From Octopus sinensis (Eukaryota): DNA of 64,000 bases. A model generated the notes under the pieces. That model did not search any database. It worked only from the letters and a program-made list of their open reading frames with translations, and was not told the DNA's origin. Positions 29,243-49,410 of the stretch are shown here, in pieces (the first letter of the stretch is position 1; each line of letters begins with the position of its first letter). The position numbers and the translations under genes are program-made. The stretch is taken from assembly GCF_006345805.1 (NCBI RefSeq), contig NC_043011.1:28842464-28906463 (forward strand), read 5' to 3'.

Positions 29243-29755
29243 TCTTTATATATAAAACTGTAGTTGTGTGAGTGTCTGTCCCCTTCGATTTAGATTCCTA
29301 ACCACTCCCACATTTTGCGGTGCAGTTTAACCAAATTCGGGTATCTTATAGTCGTGATTCATATCGAGCCCGTCTGAGTATTAGCGCACGTCTACGATGA
29401 GGCTACGATTTTTAAAATAATTTAACATCATTTTTTATTCCATTTTAATGCATAATTTTTCGTGTGTCGATGGCGGCGGAGTTGGCGTCCATGGTCACAC
29501 CTGCACCTGTTTGCTTCTCCCCCTTCTTCCCTCCCTCGTGAAGCTGTGGGGAAGGGAGTGTAAGGAAATCAACGTCGTAAAGCGTTGTCAAGGAGACCAG
29601 CATTCTTTTAGAACAACGACTTCATGGCTTGAAGACACCAAAATTACCATCATTTTTTATTCCATTTTTAATGCCTTTTTTTGCTATAACTCACTAAAAA
29701 TGCTTATATAGTTATTTCCCTTACAAAACCGAGCAACGCCGGGCGATACTGCTAG
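29243..29755 (+). mobile_element. Non-autonomous Helitron, young
   Basis: A|TC 5' end, subterminal hairpin CCGAGCAACGCCGG (29729-42), CTAG|T 3' end, no TSD, CpG-rich. Confidence 0.88.
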
Positions 29756-30646
29756 TATATATATAAAACGATGATGATGATGTATATATATCAAAGCAAA
29801 GTGGGATCAATAAGGGAATTAGTAATCCAGGAAAAATACTTCTTAAGCTCTCTGTAGATGAAAATACACGAGGTTAACAAAAAGTCCTGTGATTGTACAC
29901 TAGGTAATCTGTGTTTGTGTACGTGTGCGTGTGTATGCATTTCCCCGAAAAGAAGAACCAGCCATCAGTGGGTGTGAATAATTCTGCAGATGTTACATCA
30001 GAGTTTTCCTTCTCGTTAGAGAAATATCTAAACAAAGTCTAAGTGTCATTTACTCCCAGCTGCCAAATGACCATTGATTCTGCTGCCTTCATCTGCCCTT
30101 CGATAGGTTTTGTTTTGTGTTCTGCAGAGTGTCCAACAAAATCCTTGACAGGTTTTGCTTTGTGCTATAGAGTGTCCAATGGAAATCACCCTCCTTGCTA
30201 AACAAATGCATATATTGTTTAGAGAGTGGGATTGGCTCTGAACAAAACCTTTCCTCACAGCAAAAAAGCATCAGATTTAAGCATCACTTGATTTTTAACA
30301 TTTCTATTATGAGCTGCATACTCTGACTGGCAACAGCTGAGAAAGACAAAACACCCAATGAAAAAATTCCATTATAAAATAAAGACATGTGTGGTATGGG
30401 TGGTAAACTCTCTGAACACCTGCTGCAAGAGGCACCCATCAATGCCATCTCTGTGCTAAAGACTAAAGTGTGTTGGTCCCAAGCAGGACTGAAAGTTACA
30501 TCCATGTTGCTCATGTGTGGAGGAACAATTAAATGACGGCATTACTCAGAGTTGAGTTGCAGCCATCATTAATATATGTATGTGCTTTGCATTTATGTAA
30601 GGGTTTGTATGCATGAATATATTTGTATATATGTATGTATATATAA

Positions 30647-31884
30647 CTATAGACATGACAGAAGTAAACAGACACACTTATAATCATTAAAATTTATTTA
30701 AATCTGAAATTATACATTAAAATTATTTATTAATTGTTATAATGTGAATACATAATATCTAGTAGACATTCCCTTTGCATTTTTCAATGCAAGGACCCTA
30801 TTAGGCATGTTACTGATCAGATGACGAATATTTTCTTGCGGAATTTCTTACCAAATTTCATGTAGTAATCTCAGAAGATTTGGTTTTGAAGATGCTTTCT
30901 TGTTCTTTTTATGAAGTGTCCTGTCCATTATGTCCCAGAGGTGTTCCATGGGGTTCATATCTGGAGACTGGATTGGCCATAGAAGCTTTTCAATGGCATT
31001 CTCAACCAACAAATCTTGGGTCATTTTAGCCGTGTAACAATAAATAAAGTGTCTTCTTTAATCATTTCACCACTGGAGAAGATTGGAAGGAATCCTTTCT
31101 GCAATATGGACACATATTTATCTGAGTTTATGTTTTCCCTCATATTCCACCAGCTCTGATCTACCATTGCTCCACATTACTCCCCAGACCGTCACAGAAT
31201 AGCTGCCATATTTCATTGTTAGCTGCAATCTTTTCACATCAAATTTTTGATCACAGAGTCTCCAGATCCACACTCGACCACTATTAGGAAAAACAGCAAA
31301 TCTGGACTCATCAGAGAATATGACAGTGTCCCAAAATATTAGTGGCCTCTCTGCCATTTCACTAGCCCAATCTTTTCTCCGCTTGATGTTGGTTGGTCAA
31401 AGAAGTAGCTTCTTTCTTACCGCTCTGCCATAGTAACCTAGTTTGTGGAGATATCTGAAAGCTGTTCTGGGACTGACATCAACTTGTTCTGCTATGTCAG
31501 AGGCTTTGCAACAATGATTATCCTCCACATTTAACAAAGAGAAGGGTCCTGTTAGAGGGCCCATGTTGATCTGGGTGAGATGACATGGACTCCTTCCTCT
31601 CTCTGGTGAATTGCACAATCACTCTATTAACTATAGAAAGCAAGATCCCAAGGTTTTCTGCGATTCTACGCTGACTACGTCCACCTTCAGAGTTACCCAC
31701 ATTATAGCCTCTTTGAAATTCAGACAGTTCCAAGGCTTCTTTTATACATGACATGATTAAACAGTCACATATAGAACCTGAAACCTAAAAATGTCAATCA
31801 ATAAAGAACATAAACCTTTACAAGTTAGAATAAACATAAAACGATGTTTTATGATCTGTCTATTTACTTCTGTCATGTCTGTGT
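30647..31884 (-). mobile_element. Near full-length degenerate Tc1 (DD34E) transposon
   Basis: ~27-bp TIRs (acagacatgacagaagtaaa.agaca). Frameshifted peptides ELSEFQRG...IAENLG, WDTVIFSDESRF and WPIQSPDMNPMEHLWD. Confidence 0.92.
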
Positions 31885-32592
31885 ATATCGTCAGTGATCC
31901 AAAAGAGAAGCACACTTTAAGTTATCGAGCACATAGAGTAAATAGTTAAAGAGAGTTTTTCTCCATCCACTTTGAAGAGAGGTTATAGGCCACTGGCCAT
32001 TAAGGCCTGATGAGCCACTATAAAGTTAAGCGCTTTATAGATTTGAAACGCTGGGTAACCCCATAGAACAGCCAAAACTATCTTCATCTAATGACATATA
32101 TGTGTATGTGTGTGTATGTATATATGCATGAGTGTGCATTTGTGTGTGGATGTGTGTGTGTGTGTGTGTGTGTGCGTGTTTGTTTGTGAGTCCGTCTGTA
32201 TTTCTTCCTTGTCTTCACATATGTTCACTGTTTGTGTTAAAGAAATACACCACTGTTCATACTGGCTGTGTTGTTTGTTTCCTGTTCTCTGCCTGACTAT
32301 GTCCAGACTGGCTGGCTGTTCATTGTTCAATAGACTGGAGCATAATTAAACTTGCTTGGCAACAAGTGATGTTGGAGCTAGAAGGGGAATTCAACCATAG
32401 AAAATTCTGCTCCACCATTGTCTCTGTTAACCCATGCAAGCATAAAAATGTTAGATGTTAAAATAAGGATGATGATGATGATAATGATATATACACACAC
32501 ACAAATATATATATATGTATATATATACATGTATATGTGTGTATAAACACACACACACACACATATATATATAAACTTACTATGCATGTATA

Positions 32593-33499
32593 CAAGGGGG
32601 TACCCAAAAGTAACCAGAACCATTCTCTGTGTGACAAACCCATTGTAGCTCAGACTTCCGTCACTAGAAGCCACTTGATGCAACCTTCAGGCATCAGTCT
32701 GCCAACTGGTATTGTTAGGTATAGTCATACTGCCATATGATGCATCTTCATTTTGCAGTGCTTCTCCCCTGTTCATCAATTTTTGCAATGGCTGAAACAA
32801 AGGAACAGCATGCTTCCAAGAAATTTTGTTTTCTGCTGGAGAATATGGTGACCAAAACAGTTTTCATGCTTCAAACAACTTACAAGGACACTGCCATGAG
32901 CAAAACCACAAGTTTACAAATGGTTTCCATGCTTTAGGAATGGTTGCTTGTCTCTTGAAGACCAACTTCATTCAGGATGACTGTCAACCTCCTGAATGAA
33001 TGAAAACCTCATGAAAATCCATGAACTGATCTTGAAGTACCATTATCAAACAACTGATGAATTTGTTGATATGACTGATGTATCCTGGAGCCCTGTCAAC
33101 GAATTTTGAGTGAGGAATTGCAAATGAAAAGAGTTGCAGCAAAATTTGTGCCTCGCTTGCTCGTGGAAAATCAAAAGCAGTCATGAATGAATGTGCTTCA
33201 TGAACTGAAAGAACAATTGGAAGTTGATCCAGATCTTTTTTTCGAGGGTCATCACTGGTGATGAAAGCTAGTGCTACGGAATTTTCAGATGTGGATGAGG
33301 CGAAGAAAAAAATAATGGAGGCATAAAAAGGCATCACTTCACAAGAGTTCCAGCACTGCTTCACATAGTGGGAAACACAATTGGACCGATGCATTGCTTC
33401 AGACAGAGAATACTTTGAAGACAATAAAAGTGTAAACATGTAAAACTAAGTGAATAAAATAATATTGCAAAATTCCAGTTTCTTTTTGGTATCCCCTCA
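32593..33499 (+). mobile_element. Internally deleted mariner
   Basis: TA-flanked TIRs caagggggtacccaaaagtaaccagaa / ttccagtttctttttggtatcccctca. Peptides MKRVAAKFVPRLL and ITGDES, then a jump to the C-terminal QEFQHCF*W...LDRCI...EYFE. Confidence 0.9.
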
Positions 33500-34179
33500 T
33501 ATATATATATATATGTGTGTGTGTATACATATATGCATGTCATGTAAAAATGCCTGTGCAGTACCTCATAAAAGCACCCAGCACACTCTAAAGTGGTTGG
33601 TGTTAGGAAGGGCATCCAGCCATAGAAATCATATCAAATCAGACTGGAGTCTGGTGCAGCCCACCAACTTACCAGCTCTGGTCACACCGTACAACCCATG
33701 CAGGCACGGACAACAGACATTAAATGATAAGGATGATGAACTTCTGTATATAAATGTACCATGCACACAAAGGGAGGGCTGTATGTTTACATAGGGCAGA
33801 CAGCTGATTCATTTAAGAATTGTTATCACAACGATGTCACCAGCTTCAACAGAATCAGTAAGATACATTCAACATCTTTGGCTGATTTTTTGTGTGGCAA
33901 CTGAAGGAGGATAAAATTAAGTACAACATAACTTGGTCCATAGTAAGGCATGCAAAACCATACAATATCATTTCCAGATGCTGACTCTGCCCTGAGAAAT
34001 CCCTGTCTATTCTGTGGACCAATGTGAAGATCATTAATAGAATTTCTGAAAGACTTTCAAGATGCCTACATGCATATAAATGTTGTTGGCATCTTTTTGT
34101 CTCGGGATACAATGGAGTTGCACACAAACTAATCTAGTCTGGTTTTTACATTTCATGTCCTCTCCAGTTTTGCACAGGC

Positions 34180-34420
34180 CTGGGCTAGATGTAAGAAAAT
34201 CCTGGGTAGCCCAATCGTCAGGATTCCTCTCTCGACCTTGCTGGCGTAGTCCAAAGGAGTGCAGAGCATTACATTTGGCACCAGCTTGGTTGCAGGAGCT
34301 GCAGGACGAGTGTTGAGTCAAACACTAAACTGCCTACGGGGCTCCACTCCAGATTTCTTTGAAGGTTGTCTCCTTTCCGTAACCCTGGATAGGGGCCCAT
34401 ACCGGCTACTGTCAGCCAGA
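34180..34420 (+). mobile_element. Probable RTE LINE 5' region fragment
   Basis: ggcgtagtccaaagga...tttggcaccagc...gcaggagctgc...aactgcctacggggctccactccagattt resembles RTE 5' UTRs (recalled, not searched). Confidence 0.5.
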
Positions 34421-35058
34421 GTCAGCTGAGCCCGAGACTCATGTCAGGCAAGGTCGTCACTCCCTGAAGTAGTGAAGAAAATCGCTACCCACTACCTAAA
34501 TGTACTTTCACACAATGCAGTGGGAATAAAATTGAGTAACTGTTAACATAATTTACTTTGAGCTTTAACCTCCTTGTTTTTATAAACACTAAGTAGCTAC
34601 TTTTAACTCGCTATGTGAATGTGTGTACCAAACCACACATGTGCATATGCTTACCTTTCCATTGATGCTTGTATGAACATGTGTACATGTTGCATGTGTA
34701 CATGCAACATGAGGGCATTTATACATCGATATCTGTTAACAGTTACTTTTAATACATTTCTCACTGTATTGTGCATTCATTTCTCTTTTGCATCTGTTAT
34801 TTTATTATTGATTTCTTTTGTATAAATGAAGATGTATCCTTGTTTTGCTGCTTTTCTTTCTACAAAATGAGAAGATGCATTGCAGAACTCTTATTTTAAT
34901 GAGTTATATCTATTTATCACCTAAAGAGGCACATCTGCATTATTGGATGCTCCAAAACCAGTTGTTAAGTGTCCCACCCATAAGGGGTAGATGCTACATG
35001 CATCAAAACAAATGCCATGATTAATAAAAATTCTCATATCTTCCATCTTCCATTTACC

Positions 35059-35111
<53 letters not shown>

Positions 35112-35161
35112 CATATATATATATATACATATGTATATATACATGTGTATATTTATGTATA

Positions 35162-35223
<62 letters not shown>

Positions 35224-35225
35224 TA

Positions 35226-35256
<31 letters not shown>

Positions 35257-36239
35257 ATGTATGTATGTATGTATGAGACAACAGTCTACTCTGAGTACCA
35301 CTCTTAATTGGACTGAAGTATGATACATTGTTACATTACTAAATGTGTGTGTGTTTTTTTTTTTAGAAGGGTATTTTTTTTTAGAAGTGCAAGATCCCTG
35401 AACATAGAAGTTTTCAATCCACTCAGCAATTTCCCTTAACTTACTGACAAGATACTAACTGTCCTTGGGTCTAATTGTGGCCAATGTAGATTCTTGCCAG
35501 TTACCAGGAAATCTGAACTTATTTATTTTGTGCTACTAAAATATTATCAGGAAATGAATTTAAACTGATTCTATTGAATAACAAATGGTAGCACTATTTT
35601 GGATTTCTTTAAAGTTCAGCTTTTGGCTTCACCTGGTTTACAGACATTTGAACTTTAAACAAACTAAGAAAATAGCTTCGCTTGCCAGTGTTTATCTAAG
35701 CAGAAATATTGAAGTGAATCTTAATGAAGATAAACAGTGTTTGTTGGTAGCATATACATACTCATTTGTTTGTTTTTATCTGTTTTTCCATTTTTGCATG
35801 GGTTAGGGGAATATGTTATTAAAGTATGGTCTTACAGCCAGATGTTTTTTCTGGCACTGATCCTTACCTATTTTTCAAGTGTGGCACCTCTTATTTCGCA
35901 CGTCTTCAATGTTGCAACGCCAGTGGATGATTGGTTAACAAAAGAAATGACATCACTGTTTGTAACTCAAGATTTTGAAGAAATTTACGTGGAAATAAAC
36001 ACACAGACATACACATACATACATACCCTCATACAATATATATATGTGTGTGTGTGTGTATGTGTGTGTGTGTTTACATACCTTGTTCAAGTATCTTCTA
36101 TAGCGCTGGGCCAACCAAAGCCTTGTGACAGAAACTGAAAGACCATCGTGTGTGTGTGTGTTTGTGTCCCTTTGTCTTGATATCACATGATAGTTGTGTG
36201 TGTCCCCATCATATAAGCAGTGTCTTTCCTTTCTAGTCT

Positions 36240-36795
36240 TCCATGAAAGCATGTCTAGTCTTCTATGCATGTATTCTCATGCATATAGCTACATATCTAG
36301 ACATGCTCATATATATTTAAATGATAAACTTCTGGAAGGTTTTACAGATTTTTACAATTCCAGTGATGGACTGGATCAGTAGGCTTCGAATTAGCTTTCT
36401 CCTTTCTGGTTTTGAGAAGCCTAATTTCTCAAGATTAGTATTTAAGCAGTGTGTTACATATCTCAGGGTCCCAATAATTGCAGGTATAAACCTGAACTTG
36501 TAATATGGATAGAGTAACTGCAGATTTTTCAATAGTTCAGCATAGGATCTCTCTTTTTCACTGATCTTCAGCTTTATGTTAACATCTGCTGGGCAGCTAA
36601 TTTCCACAACTGTGCACAGTTTCTCTTCTCAATCCCAAATCATTATATCAGGTCTATTGTTCTTACATTTTATTGAGGTCTTCACTGGTACATTCCACCA
36701 GTACTCCTTTTTTATTATGAGTGGTTGTGGCTTCTACCATGTTGTGGGTTTTATTTCTTTGTCCTTGAGATTATCCTTCCAACGGATTTCGTTAT
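36240..36795 (-). mobile_element. 3' relic of a restriction-like-endonuclease (RLE) non-LTR retrotransposon
   Basis: KEYWWNVPVKTSIKCKNNRPDIMIWD*EEKLCTVVEISCPADVNIKLKISEKERSY..L..LQLLYP...IPAIIG shows the PD-(D/E) endonuclease signature. Confidence 0.85.
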
Positions 36796-37149
36796 ATGTA
36801 TGTATGGTATGCATGCATGCATGCATACACTCACACACACATTGGATAATATAGTCTTGTATGTCCTCCAGCAGAACCAAGATGCTCAAAACTGAAATGA
36901 CTTTGATCTCAGATTTGTTCAATCGTGGTTGAGCTGAGACTAAACAACAACAACATAATGACAAACACTTTATTTTCAGTTGCTGTGATGATTTGCCAAT
37001 ATATTCCTTTGAATCTCAAATACCAAATGATTTTGTAGTGACTCTTTCCATCATAAAGACCAAAAGCAATACATGGAAATATTTGAATTTGAAACTGTTA
37101 AATCTATGTTTATTCTAACTAAACAAACATGGAAAAATAAAGATTTGTG

Positions 37150-37203
<54 letters not shown>

Positions 37204-38497
37204 CGTGTGCGTGTATGTGTGTGTGTGAGCATGTCAGTATACAGAAACTTTTGATTGCATGACTGTTACACCTATTTCTTTTAATATGATTTTATTTCAT
37301 TAATTTTCTCATTACTAAATATTAAATAAAATGTTTGCTGACTTTCAAAGCTTCTTTAAACTCTGTCTGTAGCTTCTGTACTTTTTGTTGCTTTATTTTT
37401 TTTTTTTATTCAGCTATTTTATCTTTCTAAATTTCAATACCGTTTACTTAGAAATTTCATTCCCCCCCCCCCCACACACACACACACTGCAATAGGAAAG
37501 ATACCATTTATAAAATCAAAAGAGATATTCAAAGAAATATTGTTATTATATATGCAATATTTATGTCAACAAATGCCTGCTCCAAAGACTTCATCAATCA
37601 AACAGCAGCAATCTTTATGGGACTACCAAACCTCTATTGAAACTGGTTATCTGTTGCTTACAGCAATAAGAGTTCCAGTTGAGCCAGTCAATGGAACAGC
37701 CATCTCATGGCAGTAACCCTTTAACATTCAGATTTTTCTACCATTTGTAATTCTTATTGACTCAGTGTTTTGAATTAATCATGCATTGGCCAGTTTATAT
37801 GCTAAAGAGTTAATGTACAAGTAATTGAACACTCCACAGACATGTGTATCCTTAATCTTTTAGCATTTAAACCAGCCATATCAAGCCCAAATATTCTACA
37901 CATTTTACATTCAAACCAGCCAGATCTAGCCTTTCCCACCTACCCTACAATGTGTTTCTAAAAAGAAACAATCACATCATTGAAATCTTGAAGCTATAAG
38001 ATAATTAATGCAGGATTAATTCAAAACAATGTGAATATATAAGCATTACATTTGATGGGATTAATGTGGTTCCTAAGGAAACTCAGTACGACACAGAATG
38101 TGACAAGGCTGGCCCTTTGAAATACAGGGATTACACATTTTTGCCAGCTGAGTAGACTTGGAGCAACATGAAAGAATGTGCCTTGCTCAAGGACATGACA
38201 CGCCACCAGAAATTGAACTCACAACCTTATGATCACAATCCACACACCCTAGTCACTGAGCCACATGCCCTCACCCAATCCCTACAGTTATAGCATGGGG
38301 GATACATTATCCCCAGTGCATACCAATTCAAGAAATCTTGAACTAAAACTGAATAATGATATACATACATACATCCATACATCCATCCATCCATCCATCC
38401 ATACATACATACATACCAATCTCATCACATATGCATCTTATTATTATTAAGCTAATCGAGTGACCCTTATTTTTTTTACATGTACTTTCCATGCTGA

Positions 38498-40050
38498 CAT
38501 TGACTAATATTTTGTCTTAGTTAAATTGGCAAATTGGCACAAGACTGCAATACCTTAGAAGATCAGCAGTGATTTGCAATCAAAAGTCTATAGATTACAT
38601 TTTTTGTGTTACATAGTTCATTGGCCTGAATAAACTACGATACAAAGAGAAGATGGGCTGGATGAGGTGTCACAGTCTGAGCCGTTATTTTTCTGTTTAG
38701 AACTAGCTTAAAAGCCGCACTCCATATGGACTTTTAAGCTGCCTACTGTGGAAAGCCAATTGGGCTTGTAGGCCAAAACTAAAGAAAGCAATTATAATAA
38801 AGCATTTGTTGGTACCCTACTAATATGATATTACTTTAAATTCATTTTGAATGAAAAACTTGTAAGTTCACAAATTTTTGAGAGTTCTTTTAAAATTTGA
38901 ATTTTCAACTGTTAGTGTACAACAAATCCTCATCCAGACCTGATCCCAATGCTGGATGTTAAGGAACCAATTGAAGGGCAGATTTTCAATCCTGGGCTCA
39001 TCCTCATTCCAAAAAGTTATAATATGTCTATGTAGAGCAAATGGAGACTAAAATAAAGGGGTCCTAGATGGACAGACAGAATTTCATGCTTGTTATTACA
39101 TGATTGCCTTCCTAGTTGGGTCAGGGACCACATCTCACTCATATGTTCCATTTTTGGCACAGTTTCTACAGTTGGGTACCCTTACCAAAATCAAACATTT
39201 TACAGGGCATACTGAGTGCATTTTATTGTGGTACAGTACCAGAAGGTTGTCAGGTCTCTGACTAAAAGGCCCTCTCTACTCTATGTTGTTTATGGTAATT
39301 TGTCAACCATTTTAAGGAGACCTAGGTGCATTTTATCATGACACCAATCACCTGTCTTCTCTACCCTACATCACTTTTGTTCATTCACCACCCACTTGAC
39401 AGAATATATTTTTATGTTTTATGTTTCAGTCATTAGACTGTGGTCATGCTGGGGCACTGATTGAAGGGTTTTAGTCGAACAAATTGACCCCAGTAAATTT
39501 TCTTTTTAAGTCTGGTACTTATTCTATTGGTCTCTTTTCTTTCTTTTGTTTACCAAACTACTAAGTTACAGGGACGTAATCAAACCAACACCAGTTGTCA
39601 AGCAAGATGGAGAGAAAACACAACCTCAGATACACACACACACACACACACCTACAATGGGTCTCTTTCAGTTCCATCAACCAAATCCATTCACGAGGCT
39701 TTGGTCAGCCTGGTGCTACATTGGAAGACATTTGTTCAAGATGGAACTGAACTCAGAACCATGTGGTTGAGAAGCAAACTTCTTACCACACAGCCAGGTC
39801 TCCACCAATAGAGTATTTTATTGTGGCACCAGCACTGAAGATGTTATCTTGTCCCCAGAAAGGCAACACAACCCTATTAACACTATGCATTATTGTTTCT
39901 CCAAGACAATCTCTCTAGTCATGTGGAACTAATCAGGACTATGTAACACCAAAAACAGTAATCTATAGATTTTTGATTTTTAATCACTGCTGATCTTCTA
40001 ATGTTTCTCAGTCTTGTGCCAATTTTGCTAAAACATACTATTAGTCAATG
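38498..40050. mobile_element. Old element bounded by ~115-bp imperfect inverted repeats, with a nested SINE B (~39410-39800)
   Basis: 38498-38616 is approximately the reverse complement of 39938-40050 (ttggcacaagactg, ttagaagatcagcagtgatt, tctatagattac, gtgttacatagt). Confidence 0.7.
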
Positions 40051-40160
40051 ATTAATATTGATATTTTTCCTCATCACATATTCCTAGTGAGATTTTTTAT
40101 GCTCCCACTATTATGTTAATCCTTACTTAATTGTTCATGAAGCAGATGTTGCAAGTGTAA

Positions 40161-40198
<38 letters not shown>

Positions 40199-40401
40199 GC
40201 ATGCATACATGCCTGTATGAATGTATGTAAACACATGTATATTATGTGTGTGTACCTATATATAGATATGTGTGTGTATATGTGTATGTATATATATATA
40301 TATAACGGGAAGGTTTATGAAAATAAACAAAAGACGAAGGCAGGTGGAGTACAAACAAACAAATGTATTAGTATGGCGCTCAGGAATAGAAATAGAACAA
40401 G

Positions 40402-40439
40402 TCTTTTACGTTTCGAGCCTACGCTCTTCGACAGAAAGA
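40402..40439 (-). ncRNA. Minimal hammerhead-like fold with core variant
   Basis: On - strand: TCTTT|CTGTCGA|A|GAGC-GTAG-GCTC|GAAA|CGT|A|AAAGA. Stems I and II perfect, ACGT palindrome, GUA site; core position 6 is U instead of A. Confidence 0.6.
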
Positions 40440-40507
40440 TACACAGAAAAGAAACAAGGAGAGAAACAAGGAGAGAAAAAAATGCGTGTAGGAGCTAACG
40501 ATCTATC

Positions 40508-40538
<31 letters not shown>

Positions 40539-40766
40539 TGTATGTATATATATATATGTATACATCTGTGTGTGTAACCACCATAATTGTAGACCCACTT
40601 TCCATGCTGATATAGGTAGACCACTTCAGTTGGACCTAACATATGTTCAGAATTTATAGCTCTTCAAAGCAGGTCATGGGACTTCATCTTGTTCATGTTT
40701 CAGATTCTTGCTTGCTTTCTACTGCTGTAACTGATTAATCATCATTTTTTTTTTCCTTTTTTCCAG

Positions 40767-40877
40767 GTGTATCCTTTAGATAAAATGAGCAGAGATAATG
40801 GTGCCATACTCGTCTGCTGCGGCCCAGACAACAATGGAGGACATGGACTTGTCTGTGCACGACACCTTAAACATTTT
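40767..40877 (+). CDS. NAXE: NAXE/YJEFN3-like gene, exon B
   Basis: Poly-T acceptor ttttttccAG, donor GTAAGT at 40878. Encodes [37 protein letters not shown], matching the Yje[18 protein letters not shown] motif region. 111 bp, phase 0/0. Confidence 0.97.
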
Positions 40878-41445
40878 GTAAGTAAACTGATTAAGAAGCT
40901 TAAAAGTAGATCGATCTTTTATTCTTTTACTTGTTTCAGTCATTTGACAGTGGCCATGCTGGAGCACTGCCTTGAAGGGTTTTAGTTGAAGAAATCGACC
41001 CCAGGGCTTGTATTTTTTTTTAATGCCTAGTACTTATTCTATCAGTCTGTTTTGCTGAACTGATAAGTTACAGGATGTGAACACACACCAGCACAAGTTG
41101 TCAAGCTGTGATGGAAGGACAAACACAAAGGCACACATACATACATAGATAGATACTGTCTTCATCTATTGTTTCAAATTACTGTTGTTTACTTTCCTAC
41201 ATCCACCCTGTATTATTTTGTTTGCTCGAGCCCTGATTCTCTGTAAATCTTGTGGGTGACACTGATATATGACGTTCCTAGTCTTATCGTTAAAGGCATG
41301 AAACTAGGTTTTAGTATTTTTCAATTGATAACTGATGAAGTATTAGGGTTCTGGTGTCTGTCCTTCATGTACAGTTTGTAGTACTTAATTCATTTTTCAT
41401 TTATGGAATAACTAAATGCCACACATCCTGATTTTTGTTATATGC

Positions 41446-41494
<49 letters not shown>

Positions 41495-41496
<2 letters not shown>

Positions 41497-41905
41497 TTTT
41501 ACTCTCTTTTACTTGTTTCAGTCATTTGACTGTGGCCATGCTGGAGCACCACCTTTTTAGTCGAGCAAATCGACCCCAGGACTTATTCTTTGTAAGCCTA
41601 GTACTTATTCTATCGGTCTCTTTTGCCGAACCGCTAAGCTATGGGGACATAAACACACCAGCATCGGTTGTCAAGCAATGTTGGGGGGACAAACACAGAC
41701 ACACAAACATACACATACATATATATTTATACATATATACGACAGGCTTCTTTCAGTTTCCGTCTACCAAATCCACTCACAAGGCTTTGGTCGGCCTGAG
41801 GCTATAGTAGAAGACACTTGCCCAAGGTGCCACGCAGTGGGACTGAACCCGGAGCCATGTGGTTGGTAAACAAGCTACTAACCACACAGCCACTCCTACG
41901 CCTAT
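41495..41905 (-). mobile_element. SINE family B, full length (partial copies at 40917-41135 and 41920-42050)
   Basis: Match to the family B consensus. Confidence 0.9.
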
Positions 41906-43317
41906 GTGTATATATATGACAAGCTTCTTTCAGTTTCCATCTACCAAATCCACTCACAAGGCTTTGGTCAGCTCAGAGTTATAGTGAAAGACACTTGCCC
42001 GAAGTGGCATGCAGTGAGACTGAACATGTAACCACATGGGTGGGAAGCAAACCATCCTTGCACTTTTTAAAATGAACAGCTATTTCAAAATTTTACTTAA
42101 AGCATCTTTTCCAAAGTACATATACCCTTATACAATAAAGCAACACCTTTCAGCCATATATATGTTCTAATTTCAGTTTTTTTTCACCCAGACACTAATT
42201 AAATCTACAATATAGTTTGCATCTACCACAAAGTACATTTTCACCAACAGTAAGAACCACTTTAATAACTATTAATATGTGTTCGACCAATCTGCTCCCC
42301 CCGAAAATACTTTAAAACATCTCATAAATTCAGAACATAAACACCATTAACATTACACCATTTAATATATTTATTTACTTAACCTTCAACCAATAAATTT
42401 TGCTTTAACTATCATTATATATAACATAATATAATTTTATTTTTCTTTAATTCATTTCACTATAATTATGGTCTCTGCCCTTTCTAACATGATCTCAAAC
42501 TATTTCTAATACATTAACAATTTAACACTGTAAATTCACATTCCCAATAACTATATACAACATTATACGAATTTAATATTCTAAAACAATTACAATTTAA
42601 ATGTATTTTTTGTTTGAAGAGTTTGTGCCAGTTAATGCCATGTGTTATTTGTAATATATTTTCTGTACAATGAATTCAATTAGACAATACTGTTGCAGCA
42701 ATGAATAACATCCTACTGTTTTCTATAATAGAATAAATTATTTATTTGATATATCAATCATAATTGTCTATAATTGGAACATTATTTAATTTCATATATC
42801 ATCATCCTCATTGTCATCATCATCATCATCATCATCATCATTTAACTTCTGCTTTCCAAGCTGGTATGGGTTAGATGGTTTGCCTGGAACTGGTAAGCTG
42901 GAGAGCTGCACCAGGTTCCTGTCTGGTTTGGCATGGTTTCTACAACTGGATGCCCTTTTTAGTGCTTTTTATGTAAAAATAAGGGTACAGATAAAAGAAG
43001 AGAGGATGAAGATAAAAAAATGAAAAAGGATCAAAGAACTTAGGAAAAGAAATAAAGAGAATAATAAGATGCCAGCACTATTTCTCAAATTTAGGGTTGG
43101 AGCAAGAGATCAAGCAGTGAATTAGTGTCTATTGAATAGATGAAGTTCCAGTTGGTTATGGCCAGTAATTTTATGAATATATTCCTACCTATGGGAGTGT
43201 GAATACATTAAAGGAGGAATGGAGAAGTAGGCATGAATGAAGAAACCAGTTAAATATTTGTTTAAGAATAAAAGTTACAATTTAAGATTTGGAGATCTAA
43301 GAGGTTAAGGTTTAAAG

Positions 43318-43596
43318 CCGTGGTTCCCAAAGTGGGTGATATCCCCGCACCCCGGGGGGTGCAGTGGAAAGTTCCTAGGGGGTGTTGAAGAAAAGTGGGG
43401 CGATAATGGGGTAGTAATTCATGAAAAACAACAAAATAATGGGTTCATTGGATTAAGTTTTACTTGTGAAATACAGTTGCTTTGAATTTGCTTCAGAAAG
43501 AGGTATAGGCTCGTGATGGTTAGTTGGGGTGGGGGAAATAGGAATGTGGCCCAGGTGTCAAGGGGGCGGCAGACTGGAAATGTTTGAGAACCACTG
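43318..43596. mobile_element. hAT (Charlie-like) MITE
   Basis: TIRs ccgtggttcccaaa / tttgagaaccactg; exact 8-bp TSD GTTTAAAG at 43310-17 and 43597-604. Confidence 0.93.
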
Positions 43597-44676
43597 GTTT
43601 AAAGTTTAAGAGATTAAATTAAAACCTGCAGGTTAAAGTAAAGAATTCACAGCTATCTTCTAAGATACTAATGGTGATGGAGAAGATAATGAAGGGATAG
43701 ACATAAGTATATTATAACGACCATGGAAATATGCAAGTAAGTGTTATGTGTGAGGGATAGTTTACACTTGGACTTATGGAAAAATTTAAATGTCCATAAA
43801 AATATGTTTACAAGTTGTGAATGCTTTGTTTTGTTTGTTGAGTAACTGTGGTGAGTTGAGTTAATATCTGGAAGGTCTCCTTTAGGCAGAGCCCAGATTT
43901 AGAGCACTGACCCTGATATGGGATGCCAGAATCTATGATCGTCCAGGATGTCCTATATTGTATTTTCCTATTAATTAGATGGTGTATGTGGCTGGCTTGG
44001 GATGTGGAGGAGCAATGGCTCAGTGGTTAGGGCAGTGGACTCGCGGTCGTAGGATCGCGGTTTCAATTCCCAGACAGGTAATCTAAATGACTAGGTATGC
44101 TAAGTAAGTGCTGTAACGGATTACTAGGGCTCCAAGGTTGCAGATTTCCAAGCAGCAGATATATAATTCTTAAAGAGGACAACAAATGTTGAGGCAAGGC
44201 AAACACCTCAAGTCATATACATTATTATTATTAGAAAAGAAATTCAAAGTCTCACAGCTATTTCTGGGATATCCCAGTGTATGGGATATTTTGTCATTGG
44301 AGACAAATAGGGAAAATGAGAAGGGTTTAGATTAATGAACTTATGATGTAGGAGACAGGAGTAAAGGAATAAAGAGATGAAGAAAGAGAAGAAAAAAGAA
44401 GCATTAAAGTTCAGTTCTACTTTCCAATCTTGTAGAAATAAGTCCATAAGTCCTTAGCTGCAATCCTGCCTAAATCCATGTTGGTTACATGTATATATAT
44501 ACGATAGGTTTCTTTCAGTTTTTGTATACCCAGTCCACTCTGAAGGCTTTGGTTGACCTGAGGCTATAACAGAAGATGCAATGCAAGAAGACTGAACCTA
44601 GAACCATGTGGTTGGGAAACAAGCGTCTTACAACACAGCTGTGCCTATATATATGTGTGTGTGTGTATATATATAA

Positions 44677-45640
44677 ATGAATGAAAGAATGGAGTTGAAC
44701 GAAGATTTTAACAAAATTCCTTTACTCTCAACACATGTTTCGAAATTTGGCATCTTAAGGACAACAATATAACTTTCAAGCTGGATTGGTCCATATTGTC
44801 TGTATCCTTTCCTTTTGATAAGGGCAGGAAATATTGTGGCATTTGTAATTCTGAACTCTTCTATATCCTTTTCGCCAAGTTCCCCTTGGTAAACACACTA
44901 ATAGAAAAATCCTATAAATGTAAGCATTGGCAGAAGCACACTTTCCACTCATATAAATGATAAATAATATAGATAACCTCTTTGATTTTAATAATTAGTT
45001 TCACGTCTACACCACTGCCATAGACAAATTCTTTCTGTCTACTCCGTTGCATGAAACATTACTACTAAATATCGTTGGCGTATGTTTATCTCTTTCTCTC
45101 TACCTCTCCCCCTCTCTTTCTCTCTCTCTCTCTCAATCATACGCACAATCAAACACACAGACACAAATTTGTCACCTCACTACTAAATATATTTGACAAT
45201 TGTCCCCCACACACACACAATTACACACACACACACACAAATGCAGTTATATACACACACTCATACACACACATAAACACTCAAACTTATTAACAAAAGC
45301 AAACACCCGCGCATCCCCATACATACAGCATACATAATGTCCCCTTCCTATTTTTAGAACTTCCACCTTCCAACCAATTTTGACGTCATTGCTTATAACA
45401 GATTATTTTTAAAAAAACACTCATTATCACTGTGGACACCATGTAGGCAGTCATCAAAAAGTCTTTGTTCGTCTTGAGGCTGATAGAGGTTCCTTGTCTT
45501 TCCTGATGAGAAGACAGCATAATGCACCCTTTATTCCTTCGGAATTAAGAGTATGCAGTCTTCGAAACATATGTTGAGAGTAAAGGAATTTTGTTAAAAT
45601 CTTCGTTCAACTCCATTCTTTCATTTATTCATATTTAAAA
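44677..45640 (+). mobile_element. 5'-truncated Penelope-like element: endonuclease C-terminus, 3' pLTR with hammerhead, inverted pLTR tip at the 5' junction
   Basis: Open frame 44742-44960 EIWHLKDNNITFKLDWSIL...PFDKGRKYCGICNSELFYI...LVNTLIEKSYKCKHWQK* matches the PLE GIY-YIG C-terminal CxxC...CxH pattern. 44677-44745 is the reverse complement of ~45561-45635. Confidence 0.88.
45490..45588 (+). ncRNA. Type I hammerhead ribozyme fold
   Basis: Stem I TTCCTTgtCTTTC/GAGAGtaAAGGAA; core CTGATGA 45503-09; stem II GAAGAC.GCATA/TATGC.GTCTTC; GAAA 45564-67; palindromic stem III ACATATGT; site GUU at 45573-75. Confidence 0.85.
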
Positions 45641-45776
45641 AAAACACACAAATTTCCACACAAGAACACGGGGTTTCTGCCCTTGACATGTAGCTTCAAC
45701 CGTGTTTTCTGACGTGAATTTGCTACCCAGGTACCGATTAACCGAATTATCCATACTAGGATAATTCATTCACCTA

Positions 45777-45842
<66 letters not shown>

Positions 45843-46269
45843 GTATATATATATATATATAATGTATGTATAAACACATATATATATATATACATATGTA
45901 TGTATATGTGTACTTGTGTTAGAAGGCTGTCCTAGTTGTTAGGATGATGAATCGTGTTCTTGAGCAAAACACTTTATTTCACATCACTCCAATCCATTCA
46001 GCAGTAAGTGGGGTAAAAGTTGGCAAAGGGCTGGTATGCTGTTCAGGTAAAGAATATTACCTTGCCCACCTAACCAATGGATTAGCATCATTCAAAAGCT
46101 ACCACTATGCAATGAAACATATTTTGCCTAGCTGCATATAACAACATCGAATACACTCTCTCTCTCTCTCACTATATATTTATATATAAAGTCATAGTAC
46201 TGCCTACTTGCTGAGTTACTGTGCATTCTCAGTTATTAAATATATTGCTTCAATGAACTAATTTTCTAC

Positions 46270-46362
46270 TACCAAGATTCATATACATACTTACATACAT
46301 TTATACATACATGCATATATATGTCATTGTATGTCTGCATACATAATACGTACATGCATACG

Positions 46363-46443
<81 letters not shown>

Positions 46444-46593
46444 CATACATATATATATATATACATATGCATATATATATGTGTGTGTGTATGTATGTAT
46501 TATATATTATGTATATATGTATGTATATATATATATGTGTGTGTATGTACATTTGTATCATATATATATATATGTATATACACATATATATAG

Positions 46594-46690
<97 letters not shown>

Positions 46691-46720
46691 TGTATGTATG
46701 CATATATATGTCACCAAGTC
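46270..46720. repeat. Long (TA)n/(TATG)n microsatellite
   Basis: Directly visible; source of several spurious YIYI ORFs. Confidence 0.95.
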
Positions 46721-46977
46721 TAATTCTTTAAAATCTCTGATTCCAGAGTTTCCTACTTTTATCTGAGTTCCATTTCCTAAACCAAGAATATCTGTTGCAC
46801 AACTAGTCTTTAATATATTCTTTCCCCAATGCCACCACAAAATACAAAGGTTATTTCCTCTACCAAGAATAGATTGGTTCAGTTCCATGTTCTTCAATTT
46901 CTAGATATAGGCTAGTCAAAAACAGTCTATATGCTAAAAAAAATATTTTTGAATTATTTTTTCTTAATTTTTGTTTT

Positions 46978-47042
<65 letters not shown>

Positions 47043-47135
47043 TATTGTTGTCTTCATTATCCGTTGTTGTCGTCGTTGCTATTGTGCTTTTTATTCTTAT
47101 TTTTGTTGTTCTTTTTCTTGTTGCTGTTGTTTTTG

Positions 47136-47189
<54 letters not shown>

Positions 47190-47342
47190 GTGGTGGTAGT
47201 AGTTGTATTTTTTTATTTACTTCTGTCTTTATTATTTTAATATTGATTTAATTACTTTGCATTTTCATTTGCAAAAAAAAAAGAAGAATGCAGAATAAAA
47301 CTAGTCTGTTAATGCCTGCCTCTCCCCCTTCTCTGTCCCTCC

Positions 47343-47344
<2 letters not shown>

Positions 47345-47430
<86 letters not shown>
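47345..47430. repeat. (CT)n microsatellite
   Basis: Directly visible. Confidence 0.95.
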
Positions 47431-47436
<6 letters not shown>

Positions 47437-47590
47437 CACTTCATCTTCTGTTCTCTTCTGAACTATTGCTCAGGAATACTTAACTTACAACAGGTATGCA
47501 TGGAGTGCAGACAGTAAAAAGCTAGTGCATACATACAAGTATGTGCATGTATGTATATATGTATGTGTGTATATATGTATATATTATATA

Positions 47591-47643
<53 letters not shown>

Positions 47644-48009
47644 GTATGTATGTATGTATGTATGTATGTATGTATGTATGTTGTATGTATGTATGTACAC
47701 GTCACATGTACATTGACACACATATCTATATGTCTATGTATGCGTAGGCTAAGATGTACAAATGGGAGAACTAGAATTCAATACAAAAGTAGACATGAAC
47801 CACATCAGTAACTCAAAGGCAAAGAGTTTCGGGCTAAAGCACTTGCCAAACTTTTATGAGTGTTTCAGTACGAAACACTAAGCTCTGAAATCACTTTCAG
47901 GTCTTTATAACAATAAAGGCAATATACACGCAGGAAAACACTCTCTCTCTCTTTCTCTCTTTCTCACTCTCTCTCTCTCTTTCTCTCTCACTCTCTCTCA
48001 CACACACAT

Positions 48010-48040
48010 CTATGGATGGATGGATGGATGGATGGATAGT

Positions 48041-48071
<31 letters not shown>

Positions 48072-48080
48072 GTAGATAGA

Positions 48081-48116
<36 letters not shown>

Positions 48117-48181
48117 TAGGCAGGCAGGCAGGCAGGCAGGCAGACAGACAGACAGACAGACAGACAGCTAGCTAGCTAGCG

Positions 48182-48247
<66 letters not shown>

Positions 48248-48250
48248 GTA
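48010..48250. repeat. Compound tetranucleotide array (TGGA/TAGA/CAGA/CAGG/CTAG)
   Basis: Directly visible. Confidence 0.95.
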
Positions 48251-48254
48251 GGTC

Positions 48255-48790
48255 ATCATCATCCTTAAACATTCAGGTTTGACGAGAACAAACAAGCTGG
48301 AGAGCAACACCAGGTTCCAGTCTGATTTGGCTTTGATTTTTATGGCTGGATGTCCCTCATGATACCAACCACTTTACAGTGTGTACTGGGTGCTTTTAAC
48401 ATGGCACCAGCACAAGACTCTTGCAGGCCAATCCTCTTCACCAGGGTATGTGGCCTTAACACTTTTGCTGTGGTGGACAGATCCTCTTGAGTACTGCAAA
48501 GCATCAGATATCTCAGTCCTTTGTCATCTCCTCTGAAAGATTCAGCGTTCTGAGGTCATTCATCAGTACTTTGTCTCATGGGTATCTCTTTTCCACAAGT
48601 CCCATCCACTTTGAATGATCGTACTTCTTAATGGATCTCTCGACATCTAACCACATCACATGACCAAACCAGCACAATCTTCTCTCTTGGACGCTGTATC
48701 TAATTCCTCTTGTGCCTAACTTTTTTCTCAACACACTAGCATTCTGTCACATGTGTGCACTTCCATCGCACATACTGGCCATGTACCAAC
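48255..48790 (-). mobile_element. RTE LINE 3' end
   Basis: Peptide VQERRLCWFGHVMWLD (the RLRWFGHVxR motif), followed by a 3' UTR and a (GAT)n tail. Confidence 0.85.
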
Positions 48791-49148
48791 ACACATGCCT
48801 TTCTCTGAACTATCCATCCTTTCCTCCTTTATTCACTGATGGTCTAGAACCTCTTAAAATAAACACTAATTTATGAGCAGGGACTTCAGATTCTCACAGT
48901 TGCCAGACTAGTTAACTGGTACCTTGCACAGAATAGTATTTGTTGACTTGTATCCTTATTTTAATGTACAGGACATGTATTTCATTTATTTAAGTAAATT
49001 TAATATTTGCTTAATTTAGAATGTTTTGACCCATGGTATTGACTGGTTTAGAAAAATTAGAAATCTAAAAAGGTTTTTGAAAACCAATGTTGTATACAAA
49101 CAGAAATATGATATGTTTACAATTTTTATTTTTTACTATTTTTTGCAG

Positions 49149-49410
49149 GGGTACAAACCATCCATTTTCTACCCTAAAACTTCAAATCAACAAATCTTTG
49201 AAAACCTGAGACTGCAATGTGAGAGAATGGATATGCCATTCCTCTCATTCTTTCCCAGTGAACCACATCTGATAGACTCAGCTTATAATCTTGTGGTTGA
49301 TGCTATCTATGGTAGCTGTCACAAAGAGCGAATCACTGGAGACTTTGCTTCTGTACTAGAGACACTGAAAAAGATTGAAAATCCTCTCGTAAGTTTGGAC
49401 ATTCCTTCAG
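49149..49410 (+). CDS. NAXE: NAXE/YJEFN3-like gene, exon C
   Basis: Acceptor ttttgcAG, donor GTAGGT at 49411. Encodes GYKPSIFYPK...QCERMDMPFLSFFP...YNLVVDAIYG...PLVSLDIPS(G). 262 bp, phase 0/1. Confidence 0.97.

What the first reader, a model, noticed from the sequence alone, without database searches (positions are those of the whole stretch)
40767..49410. YjeF_N protein with altered substrate-binding motifs: a possible YJEFN3-like pseudo-epimerase in a mollusc
Seen: GPDNNGGHG (D at 40827-29, H at 40842-44) replaces GPGNNGGDG, and DAIYGSCHKE (49299 onward) replaces DAIFGFSFKG. The DIPSG aspartate and the YPK lysine are kept. Established: NNGGD and the GFSFKG segment bind NAD(P)HX in NAXE/Nnr epimerases, and vertebrate YJEFN3 is degenerate at the same sites. 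Several residues here (ELLxEY, AVAxT, IFYP, FLS, PLVSLDIPSG, PKxCA, GxDC) resemble YJEFN3 more than NAXE, from recalled sequences. Inference: a divergent paralog, either an ancient YJEFN3 orthologue or a convergent loss of function.
Basis: partly seen in the sequence, partly recalled or inferred. Interest (0 to 1): 0.7.

Follow-up and report, generated by a model that had tools for sequence, protein, structure and literature searches.

The report
Octopus NAXE gene with remodelled pocket
The window holds the original, intron-containing NAD(P)HX-epimerase (NAXE) gene of Octopus vulgaris, whose ligand-binding loops have been rewritten and then conserved, while an intronless copy elsewhere in the genome keeps the normal enzyme residues. 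This parallels vertebrate YJEFN3 but arose independently.

Summary
Exons at 40767-40877 and 49149-49410 (+ strand) encode GPDNNGGHG and DAIYGSCHKE in place of GPGNNGGDG and DAIFGFSFKG, within a YjeF_N protein (Pfam 2e-30) that is 100% identical to an Octopus vulgaris protein.

The gene is not a YJEFN3 orthologue.
- It has the same intron positions as a canonical pearl-oyster NAXE. Sister-species transcripts show the same alternative first exon as that gene.
- It nests among mollusc NAXE sequences in a tree.
- It is 66-68% identical to mollusc NAXE but only about 50% identical to YJEFN3.

Coleoid cephalopods carry a second NAXE copy. It is a single uninterrupted ORF in Octopus sinensis, Argonauta and a probable squid or cuttlefish, so it is probably a retrogene. 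It keeps all 54 near-invariant NAXE positions.

The window gene has changed 8 of those 54 positions. Seven of the eight are also changed in YJEFN3, which is reported to lack epimerase activity (P = 2.5e-4). The gene is nevertheless under strong purifying selection (omega about 0.04) and is predicted to keep the fold (TM 0.98 to mouse AI-BP).

My best reading is that the parental locus shifted away from NAD(P)HX epimerisation after the retrocopy took over that job. Loss of activity is inferred, not shown. Interest is moderate.

The parts
7721..7829 (+). Exon 2 of the gene. The first base completes a split codon. It encodes (S)[36 protein letters not shown] and carries the D69E and M84L changes (human NAXE numbering).
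   Evidence: tblastn to human NAXE E = 1.4e-8; AG acceptor and GTGAAG donor; same boundaries in Argonauta and Pinctada.
7830..40766 (+). Intron of 32.9 kb, rich in microsatellites. I found no other gene in it.
40767..40877 (+). Exon 3. It holds the beta1-alphaA loop GPDNNGGHG (40821-40847), with G118D at 40827-29 and D123H at 40842-44.
   Evidence: The His at position 123 is present in all four cephalopod orthologues.
49149..49410 (+). Exon 4. It holds the beta4-alphaD loop DAIYGSCHKE (49299-49328; F188Y, F190S, S191C, F192H). It also holds the retained K+ ligand Asp185 and the retained invariant Asp of DIPSG (49398-49400).
   Evidence: Loop roles are taken from PMC4059234.
53366..53700 (+). 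Exon 5, ending in stop codon TAG at 53698-53700. It holds the retained catalytic-type Lys of CPK (53434-53436), the F262Y change in GGRY, the conserved C-terminus to VELK, and then a Thr/Ser-rich tail (53566-53697).
   Evidence: The same read-through C-terminus appears in the O. bimaculoides and O. sinensis RefSeq models and in Argonauta. Weak Pfam Mucin hit on the tail.
61787..61883 (+). Alternative last exon used by the deposited O. vulgaris model (P0002). It is spliced from a cryptic donor after GGR inside exon 5 and replaces the conserved C-terminal 40 residues. It is probably an annotation artefact or a minor isoform.
   Evidence: 100% tblastn match to the P0002 C-terminus; AG acceptor at 61785-86; sister-species models do not use it.

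Best explanation
The window carries exons 2-5 of the ancestral, intron-bearing NAXE (NAD(P)HX epimerase, AIBP) locus of Octopus vulgaris.

Before the last common ancestor of octopuses and cuttlefish/squid, an mRNA of this gene was probably retro-copied to another chromosome, most likely the mRNA of the isoform with the mitochondrial-type presequence. That intronless copy keeps every near-invariant NAXE residue and is presumably the working epimerase.

The parental locus then changed the two loops that form the dinucleotide-binding trench (D123H, F188Y, F190S/I, F192H, R197K/T) and three other invariant positions. It kept the fold, the K+ ligands, the invariant pocket Asp and the catalytic-type Lys.

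The new residues (His123, Tyr188, His192) have been fixed across coleoids, and the gene is under strong purifying selection. It is therefore a working protein with an altered pocket. Most likely it no longer epimerises NAD(P)HX, or does so poorly, and instead serves an epimerase-independent or altered-ligand function. It is a convergent analogue of vertebrate YJEFN3, not its orthologue.

Shown: the gene structure, the paralogy, the intronless canonical copy, the selective constraint, the retained fold, the separation from YJEFN3 and the positional convergence with it. Inferred: the loss or change of catalytic activity, and the order of events.
For: Gene model and species.

Ancestral structure: the four intron positions are the same as in the Pinctada canonical NAXE gene and in Argonauta. 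The Pinctada gene starts with an MDRISV first exon, as do the O. vulgaris (P0002) and O. bimaculoides models of this gene. O. bimaculoides RefSeq isoforms show both alternative first exons, MDRISV... and MLCKVFNRWVPVARNMF....

Second copy: it is a single uninterrupted ORF in O. sinensis (783 bp), in Argonauta (783 bp) and on an unnamed 246-kb ENA contig (810 bp). That contig's product clusters at 90% or more with the transcripts I take to be from squid or cuttlefish. The copy is also present in O. vulgaris on a different contig. Its only close relatives are three 90%-identity clusters that I assign to cephalopods (two of them unnamed transcript sets); the next best hits are 60-66% identical.

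Conservation: of 54 positions at least 93% invariant in 236 homologues, the window lineage changes 8, the intronless copy 0 and YJEFN3 15. The overlap is 7 of 8 (hypergeometric P = 2.5e-4).

Constraint: Octopus versus Argonauta gives dN 0.062-0.069 and dS at least 1.5, so omega is at most 0.05. The intronless copy gives omega about 0.06.

Fold: AlphaFold2 pLDDT 92, and TM 0.98 / rmsd 0.9 A to mouse AI-BP 2dg2.

Not YJEFN3.

Literature: the trench is flanked by the beta1-alphaA and beta4-alphaD loops, and the latter makes most contacts to the ADP moiety. F162 of mouse AI-BP (my mapping: human F192, which is His here) gates the trench (PMC4059234). Mouse Yjefn3 lacks epimerase activity and lacks these residues (PMC12861718).
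Against: No activity or binding data exist for this protein. The invariant pocket Asp, the Lys whose mutation abolishes activity in E. coli YjeF, and the three K+ ligands are all retained, so residual or altered catalysis is possible.

I know of no mutational data for Asp123 or Phe192.

The NJ tree does not resolve whether the two cephalopod copies are sisters. Quartets give 36% for the pair as sisters and 58% for the window copy grouping with other molluscs. The retrocopy could therefore be older than cephalopods, although no non-cephalopod relative was found.

The presequence similarity between the retrocopy and exon 1b is weak. No poly(A) remnant is evident directly downstream of the stop codon in O. 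sinensis, and I did not search for target-site duplications. dS is saturated, so omega is only an upper-bound estimate. Only distance-based phylogeny was possible.
Confidence: 0.7

Rival explanations
1. It is still an active NAD(P)HX epimerase. The two cephalopod copies would have divided the ancestral job by compartment or tissue (for example the MDRISV cytosolic isoform versus the mitochondrial one), and the loop substitutions would be tolerated or would only tune affinity.
For: The catalytic-type Lys, the invariant Asp, the K+ ligands and the fold are all retained. Purifying selection is strong. The gene keeps both alternative first exons.
Against: Asp123 is invariant in 99-100% of homologues, while Phe188 is 97%/100% invariant and Phe190 and Phe192 are 94% (100% and 96% in metazoans). 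The same positions are the ones lost in YJEFN3, which is reported to be inactive. The beta4-alphaD loop that makes most ADP contacts is rewritten. The gene keeps a presequence-type isoform of its own (P0415), although neither presequence was tested for targeting, so division by compartment alone does not explain the changes.
Confidence: 0.24
2. It is an ancient orthologue of vertebrate YJEFN3, retained in cephalopods and lost in other molluscs.
For: Seven of the 8 changed invariant positions coincide with YJEFN3 changes, and D69E is the identical residue. 12.4% of quartets pair it with YJEFN3.
Against: It nests in mollusc NAXE. 87.6% of quartets go against this pairing. It is about 50% identical to YJEFN3 versus 66-68% to mollusc NAXE. 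HMM scores are 385 versus 290 bits. The replacement residues differ (His versus Val/Ile at 123; His versus Val/Ala at 192). It shares gene structure and the MDRISV first exon with canonical mollusc NAXE. YJEFN3 is itself closest to vertebrate NAXE. No NDUFA13 neighbour is present.
Confidence: 0.03
3. It is a decaying pseudogene or an artefact of gene prediction.
For: The motifs are degenerate. The deposited O. vulgaris model has an odd C-terminus.
Against: The reading frame is open across four exons with canonical splice sites. Omega is at most 0.05 over the Octopus-Argonauta divergence. The orthologues I assign to squid or cuttlefish are 77-81% identical, and one of them is an assembled transcript. 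The model is confident.
Confidence: 0.03

Closest known systems
NAXE / AIBP / APOA1BP (NAD(P)HX epimerase, EC 5.1.99.6; mouse AI-BP structures 2dg2, 2o8n, 3rno)
   Same: Same family and fold (Pfam YjeF_N 2e-30; predicted TM 0.98 to 2dg2). Same intron positions as the mollusc NAXE gene, and orthologues carry the same alternative first exons. It retains Asn120, Asp185 and Ser221 (K+ ligands), Asp218 and Lys245.
   Different: Eight of 54 near-invariant positions are changed: D69E, M84L, D123H, F188Y, F190S/I, F192H, R197K/T and F262Y. Octopods also have G118D and a Thr/Ser-rich C-terminal tail. Epimerase activity is doubtful.
Vertebrate YJEFN3 (AIBP2)
   Same: It is a second NAXE-like paralogue that coexists with a canonical NAXE. 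It has changes at 7 of the same 8 invariant positions in the ligand trench while keeping Asp218 and Lys245. Mouse Yjefn3 is reported to lack epimerase activity (PMC12861718).
   Different: Independent origin: YJEFN3 is a separate vertebrate clade, whereas this gene sits inside mollusc NAXE. The replacement residues differ (GPEQNGA[VI]G and LGPGVEPGE versus GPDNNGGHG and YGSCHKE). YJEFN3 has further changes (G135E, G259A and others, 15 of 54 in all). Here it is the parental locus that diverged, and a retrocopy kept the enzyme residues.
EDC3 YjeF_N domain (non-epimerase YjeF_N protein that binds NADH)
   Same: YjeF_N fold with the retained invariant Asp and an altered trench. It shows that the fold can serve as a ligand-sensing module without acting as an epimerase (PMC4059234).
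   Different: Only 17% identity (Foldseek TM 0.73-0.77). EDC3 has extra LSm and FDF domains and a role in mRNA decapping. There is no evidence for such a role here.
Retrogene replacement (for example amphioxus SYCP1, PMC5803294)
   Same: A single-exon retrocopy carries the ancestral function of a multi-exon parent.
   Different: In classical replacement the parent is lost. Here the parent survives under strong constraint with a remodelled pocket.

Membership tests
YjeF_N domain family (Pfam PF03853) | Significant match to the family profile over the whole domain | tested here: met
   E = 2e-30, 106 bits against a cut-off of 24.9, profile positions 3-169 of 169.
YjeF_N domain family (Pfam PF03853) | YjeF_N three-dimensional fold | tested here: met
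   AlphaFold2 pLDDT 92.1 and pTM 0.91. Foldseek TM 0.98/0.95 and rmsd 0.9 A to mouse AI-BP 2dg2.
NAD(P)HX epimerase (NAXE/Nnr epimerase domain) | NNGGD segment of the beta1-alphaA loop (human 119-123) | tested here: not met
   It reads NNGGH. Asp123 is 99-100% invariant in 236 homologues, and His is present in all four cephalopod orthologues.
NAD(P)HX epimerase (NAXE/Nnr epimerase domain) | F-G-F-S-F-K segment of the beta4-alphaD loop (human 188-193) | tested here: not met
   It reads YGSCHK in octopods and YGIQHA in the cuttlefish and the second, unnamed orthologue.
NAD(P)HX epimerase (NAXE/Nnr epimerase domain) | K+ ligands Asn120, Asp185 and Ser221, and the invariant pocket Asp218 | tested here: met
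   All are retained. The assignment of roles rests on my recollection of the UniProt/HAMAP annotation, checked for numbering, and on PMC4059234.
NAD(P)HX epimerase (NAXE/Nnr epimerase domain) | Invariant Lys required for activity (E. coli YjeF K192; human K245) | tested here: met
   CPK Lys at 53434-36 (PMC5938422).
NAD(P)HX epimerase (NAXE/Nnr epimerase domain) | Catalyses R/S-NAD(P)HX interconversion | not testable with these tools
   This needs a coupled enzyme assay.
Vertebrate YJEFN3 orthology group | Monophyly with vertebrate YJEFN3 | tested here: not met
   NJ tree with 200 bootstraps, quartets 87.6% against and HMM scores.
Vertebrate YJEFN3 orthology group | YJEFN3 signature residues (GPEQNGA[VI]G, LGPG/LGA..., FEYEP, HHFVAGRF) | tested here: not met
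   The window protein has [21 protein letters not shown] and HHYLGGRY.
Vertebrate YJEFN3 orthology group | Conserved neighbourhood (NDUFA13 adjacent, seen as NDUFA13-YJEFN3 fused models) | tested here: inconclusive
   No NDUFA13-like sequence lies in the 64-kb window. However, the annotated gene spans 274 kb, so any neighbours lie outside the window.
Retrogene (applies to the partner copy, not to the window gene) | Coding sequence without the parental introns, at a different locus | tested here: met
   Single ORFs in O. sinensis, Argonauta and an unnamed ENA contig. In O. vulgaris it lies on a different contig from the window gene.
Retrogene (applies to the partner copy, not to the window gene) | Poly(A) remnant and target-site duplications | not tested
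   No A-run directly follows the stop codon in L001. Such marks are expected to be erased at this age.

The most novel reading that the evidence does not exclude
NAXE has an old second function that does not need NAD(P)HX epimerisation. Whenever a spare canonical copy appears, one copy is released to specialise in that second function by rewriting the same trench residues. This would have happened in vertebrates (YJEFN3), in coleoid cephalopods (this gene, where unusually the parental locus specialised and a retrogene kept the enzyme), and repeatedly in bivalves and gastropods. The two conserved histidines (positions 123 and 192) would then mark a new ligand or metal site rather than decay.
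Probability: 0.35. Interest if true: 0.65.

Novelty: new variant of a known kind. Interest (0 to 1): 0.5.

Why it matters
What YJEFN3 does, and whether NAXE moonlights (cholesterol efflux via AIBP, or vitamin B6 homeostasis), are both unresolved. NAXE deficiency is lethal in children, for reasons that NADHX accumulation alone may not explain (PMC5938422, PMC12861718).

An independent, strongly conserved lineage that altered the same trench positions while keeping the pocket Asp and Lys is a natural replicate of YJEFN3. It indicates which residues are dedicated to epimerisation and which to whatever else the fold does. It also offers a pair of proteins (window gene versus retrocopy) for direct comparison.

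It is also a clear case in which a retrogene appears to have inherited a housekeeping role while the parental gene changed. I found no report of this in the searchable literature.

Tried and rejected
- Exon 1: I searched the window for a first exon. Neither the MDRISV... exon nor the MLCKVF... presequence exon is present. From the 274-kb annotated range, the MDRISV exon lies roughly 212 kb upstream (inference).
- Second copy: I looked for another NAXE copy in the window and found none.
- YJEFN3 orthology: rejected by the tree, quartets, identities and HMM scores.
- Pseudogene: rejected by omega.
- Synteny: the window has no NDUFA13-like sequence and no other called gene. The look-up of the Ostrea protein P0007 failed.
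- Sisterhood of the two cephalopod copies: unresolved by NJ and quartets. The presequence alignment is only weakly supportive.
- RNA editing: considered from the codon table. A-to-I editing could turn GAC (Asp118) into Gly, but it cannot turn CAT (His123) into Asp or rebuild GFSFKG. Editing therefore cannot restore the canonical site.
- Other content of the window: the Rfam and tRNA scans were empty. The 15 ORFs of 130 aa or more are microsatellite and other non-gene read-throughs, or overlap exons 2 and 4.
- Methods not available: no ML phylogeny or codeml software was installed. Model coordinates cannot be read, so the His123-His192 distance could not be measured.


Full report
**1. What is in the window**

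On the + strand, four exons with canonical AG/GT boundaries encode a YjeF_N protein. They lie at 7721-7829, 40767-40877, 49149-49410 and 53366-53700, with stop codon TAG at 53698-700.

Each exon matches human NAXE (sequence recalled from memory; numbering checked) at E = 1e-8 to 2e-23. The spliced 271-aa product hits Pfam YjeF_N at 2e-30.

GPDNNGGHG has Asp at 40827-29 and His at 40842-44. DAIYGSCHKE starts at 49299. DIPSG is retained.

The 271 residues are exons 2-5 only. The first exon is not in the window. The product is 100% identical to a deposited Octopus vulgaris protein, P0002, whose annotated gene spans 274 kb.

P0002 ends differently from my model. It uses a cryptic donor after GGR and an exon at 61787-61883. 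RefSeq models of O. bimaculoides and O. sinensis, and the Argonauta model, use the read-through exon 5 that I describe.

**2. Who has the altered motifs**

Among the 120 best database hits, about 100 have the canonical GPGNNGGDG and FGFSFK. Only two groups replace the Asp of NNGGD.
- Four 90%-identity clusters that I take to be cephalopod orthologues of the window gene: Octopus, Argonauta, the cuttlefish Acanthosepion, and an unnamed transcript set that clusters with the cuttlefish sequence and is probably from a squid or cuttlefish.
- Extra paralogues in some bivalves.

Octopods read GPD[NS]NGGHG and YGSCH[KM]E. The cuttlefish and the unnamed transcript read GPGNNGAHG and YGIQHAG. His123, Tyr188 and His192 (human NAXE numbering) are therefore shared by all four.

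**3. A canonical copy exists, and it is intronless**

Octopus sinensis P0078 is 56-58% identical to the window protein and has all the canonical motifs. Its 90% cluster includes proteins from O. vulgaris, O. bimaculoides and Argonauta. The O. vulgaris member (CAI9737168.1) sits on a 73.6-Mb contig, whereas the window gene sits on an 84.0-Mb contig.

In genomic DNA this gene is a single uninterrupted ORF in three assemblies:
- 783 bp in O. sinensis;
- 783 bp in Argonauta;
- 810 bp on an unnamed 246-kb ENA contig, whose product clusters with the transcripts I take to be from squid or cuttlefish.

The window gene has the opposite character. It has the same four intron positions as the canonical NAXE gene of the pearl oyster Pinctada, and that gene starts with an MDRISVNRFSFRRKGS first exon, as does the annotated Octopus protein. 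Argonauta has the same exon structure. O. bimaculoides isoforms show two alternative first exons for this gene: MDRISV... and a presequence-like MLCKVFNRWVPVARNMFSRSV....

So the window gene is the parental locus, and the canonical copy is most simply a retrogene. If the unnamed sequences are indeed from squid or cuttlefish, the retrogene predates the octopod-decapodiform split. Its only close relatives are the three clusters assigned to cephalopods; the next best hits are generic NAXE at 60-66% identity.

**4. It is not a YJEFN3 orthologue**

I retrieved real YJEFN3 sequences. They carry GPEQNGA[VI]G and [VI]LGPGVEPGE-type loops. Four lines of evidence separate them from the window gene.
- NJ tree (73 sequences, 227 columns, 200 bootstraps). 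The cephalopod divergent clade (100%) lies inside mollusc NAXE (53% support for the mollusc clade). YJEFN3 forms its own 100% clade.
- Four-point quartets. 87.6% give (window lineage, mollusc NAXE | vertebrate NAXE, YJEFN3), and 12.4% pair the window lineage with YJEFN3. YJEFN3 is itself closest to vertebrate NAXE.
- Identities. The window protein is 66-68% identical to mollusc NAXE, 57-58% to vertebrate NAXE and about 50% to YJEFN3.
- Profile HMMs. It scores 385 bits against mollusc NAXE, 336 against vertebrate NAXE and 290 against YJEFN3. Ordinary invertebrate NAXE proteins score about the same against the YJEFN3 model.

PLVSLD is octopod-only.

**5. The resemblance to YJEFN3 is real at the level of positions**

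I defined 54 positions that are at least 93% invariant in 236 NAXE homologues and essentially 100% invariant in 103 metazoan ones.

| Lineage | Positions changed (of 54) |
|---|---|
| Window lineage | 8: D69E, M84L, D123H, F188Y, F190S/I, F192H, R197K/T, F262Y |
| Intronless copy | 0 |
| YJEFN3 | 15 |

Seven of the 8 window-lineage changes fall on positions that YJEFN3 also changes. About 2.2 would be expected by chance (hypergeometric P = 2.5e-4).

The literature places these loops at the ligand trench. The beta1-alphaA and beta4-alphaD loops flank the trench, and the latter makes most contacts with the ADP moiety. F162 of mouse AI-BP, which by my mapping is human F192 and is His here, blocks the trench in the apo form (PMC4059234).

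Several functional residues are retained: the invariant pocket Asp; the Lys whose mutation removes at least 95% of epimerase activity in E. coli YjeF (PMC5938422); and the K+ ligands. Mouse Yjefn3 is reported to lack epimerase activity (PMC12861718).

**6. It is a working gene**

Between Octopus and Argonauta, the 227-codon core has dN 0.062-0.069 and a saturated dS of at least 1.5, so omega is at most 0.05. This is as constrained as the intronless copy, which has omega about 0.06.

AlphaFold2 gives pLDDT 92. Its lowest 10-residue block (mean 80) covers residues 131-140, which include most of the rewritten loop. The model superposes on mouse AI-BP with TM 0.98 and rmsd 0.9 A.

**7. Interpretation**

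The shown facts fit the following sequence of events. A retrocopy preserved the housekeeping epimerase. The parental locus then altered its dinucleotide trench and fixed new residues (His, Tyr, His), which points to a shifted function rather than decay.

Loss of epimerase activity is inferred, at roughly two chances in three. The main rival is that the protein is still an epimerase with tolerated changes.

The same pattern of a spare copy with altered trench residues recurs in other taxa: Ruditapes, oysters, Mya, Batillaria, Bradybaena, a flatworm, a leech and a cockroach. This suggests that NAXE duplicates are repeatedly released from epimerase constraint.

I found no published description of the cephalopod pair.

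**8. Limits**

- Phylogeny was distance-based only, because no ML software was available.
- dS is saturated.
- The timing relative to Nautilus is unknown.
- There are no biochemical data.
- Two clusters that I treat as squid or cuttlefish sequences carry no species name.
- Residue roles rest on literature and recalled annotation, and I could not read the model coordinates.

Noticed in passing
Not in the window (first exon, upstream); seen in P0002, P0006, P0413 and others: A conserved alternative N-terminal exon, MDRISVNRFSFRRKGS, is present in NAXE models of many molluscs, a brachiopod and a nemertean. A shorter RFSF[RK]RR core occurs in a sea star, a hemichordate and chelicerates (24 of 120 hits). 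It resembles the basic RFSFKK core of the MARCKS effector domain (my recollection). It suggests an old, non-mitochondrial isoform that may be phospho-regulated or membrane-binding.
   Followed up: partly
Related proteins P0023, P0024, P0030, P0033, P0036-38, P0041, P0053, P0084, P0249, P0259, P0275: Independent NAXE duplicates with altered NNGGD and/or GFSFK loops occur in Ruditapes (five copies), oysters, Mya, Batillaria, Bradybaena, Macrostomum, Helobdella and Diploptera. Most of the mollusc ones with a complete N-terminus carry the MDRISV-type N-terminus; that of Ruditapes P0036 is degenerate, and two others have cut N-termini. In Mya and the oysters, canonical copies carry a presequence-like N-terminus.
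   Followed up: partly
window 53484 (cryptic donor) and 61787-61883: The deposited O. vulgaris model P0002 splices out of exon 5 after GGR into a distant exon. This replaces the conserved last 40 residues with an unconserved peptide. Sister-species RefSeq models do not do this, so it is a likely annotation artefact or a minor isoform.
   Followed up: partly
window 53566-53697: A Thr/Ser/Asn-rich low-complexity tail ([44 protein letters not shown]) follows the domain. It is longer in Argonauta and short in the unnamed (probably squid or cuttlefish) transcript P0003. It gives a weak Pfam Mucin hit (E = 3e-4, below the cut-off).
   Followed up: no
L003 10001-10177 (Argonauta hians): The first 40 residues of the Argonauta model P0001 (IGSIPSYPTREVFGAISKLNNSRPPGLDALHAEILK...) look like a fragment of a retroelement reverse transcriptase joined wrongly to the gene.
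   Followed up: no
P0410 (O. vulgaris copy of the intronless gene): The deposited O. vulgaris model of the canonical copy has an aberrant Asp/Cys-rich C-terminus after GGR. The O. sinensis and Argonauta loci have the normal ending in one ORF, so this is probably a mis-splice in the annotation.
   Followed up: no
window 7440-7720, 40510-40560, 46300-46900, 51890-52360, 57100-58800: There are long microsatellite tracts: (ATT)n just upstream of exon 2, (ATGT)n upstream of exon 3, and TA/CA-rich runs elsewhere. They generate most of the 15 ORFs of 130 aa or more; two further ORFs overlap exons 2 and 4. No tRNA or Rfam match occurs anywhere in the window.
   Followed up: yes
window 40827-40829: The octopod-specific Asp118 codon GAC could be recoded to Gly (GGC) by A-to-I editing, which is common in coleoids. 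The His123 codon CAT cannot be edited to Asp. I did not check this against editing data.
   Followed up: no
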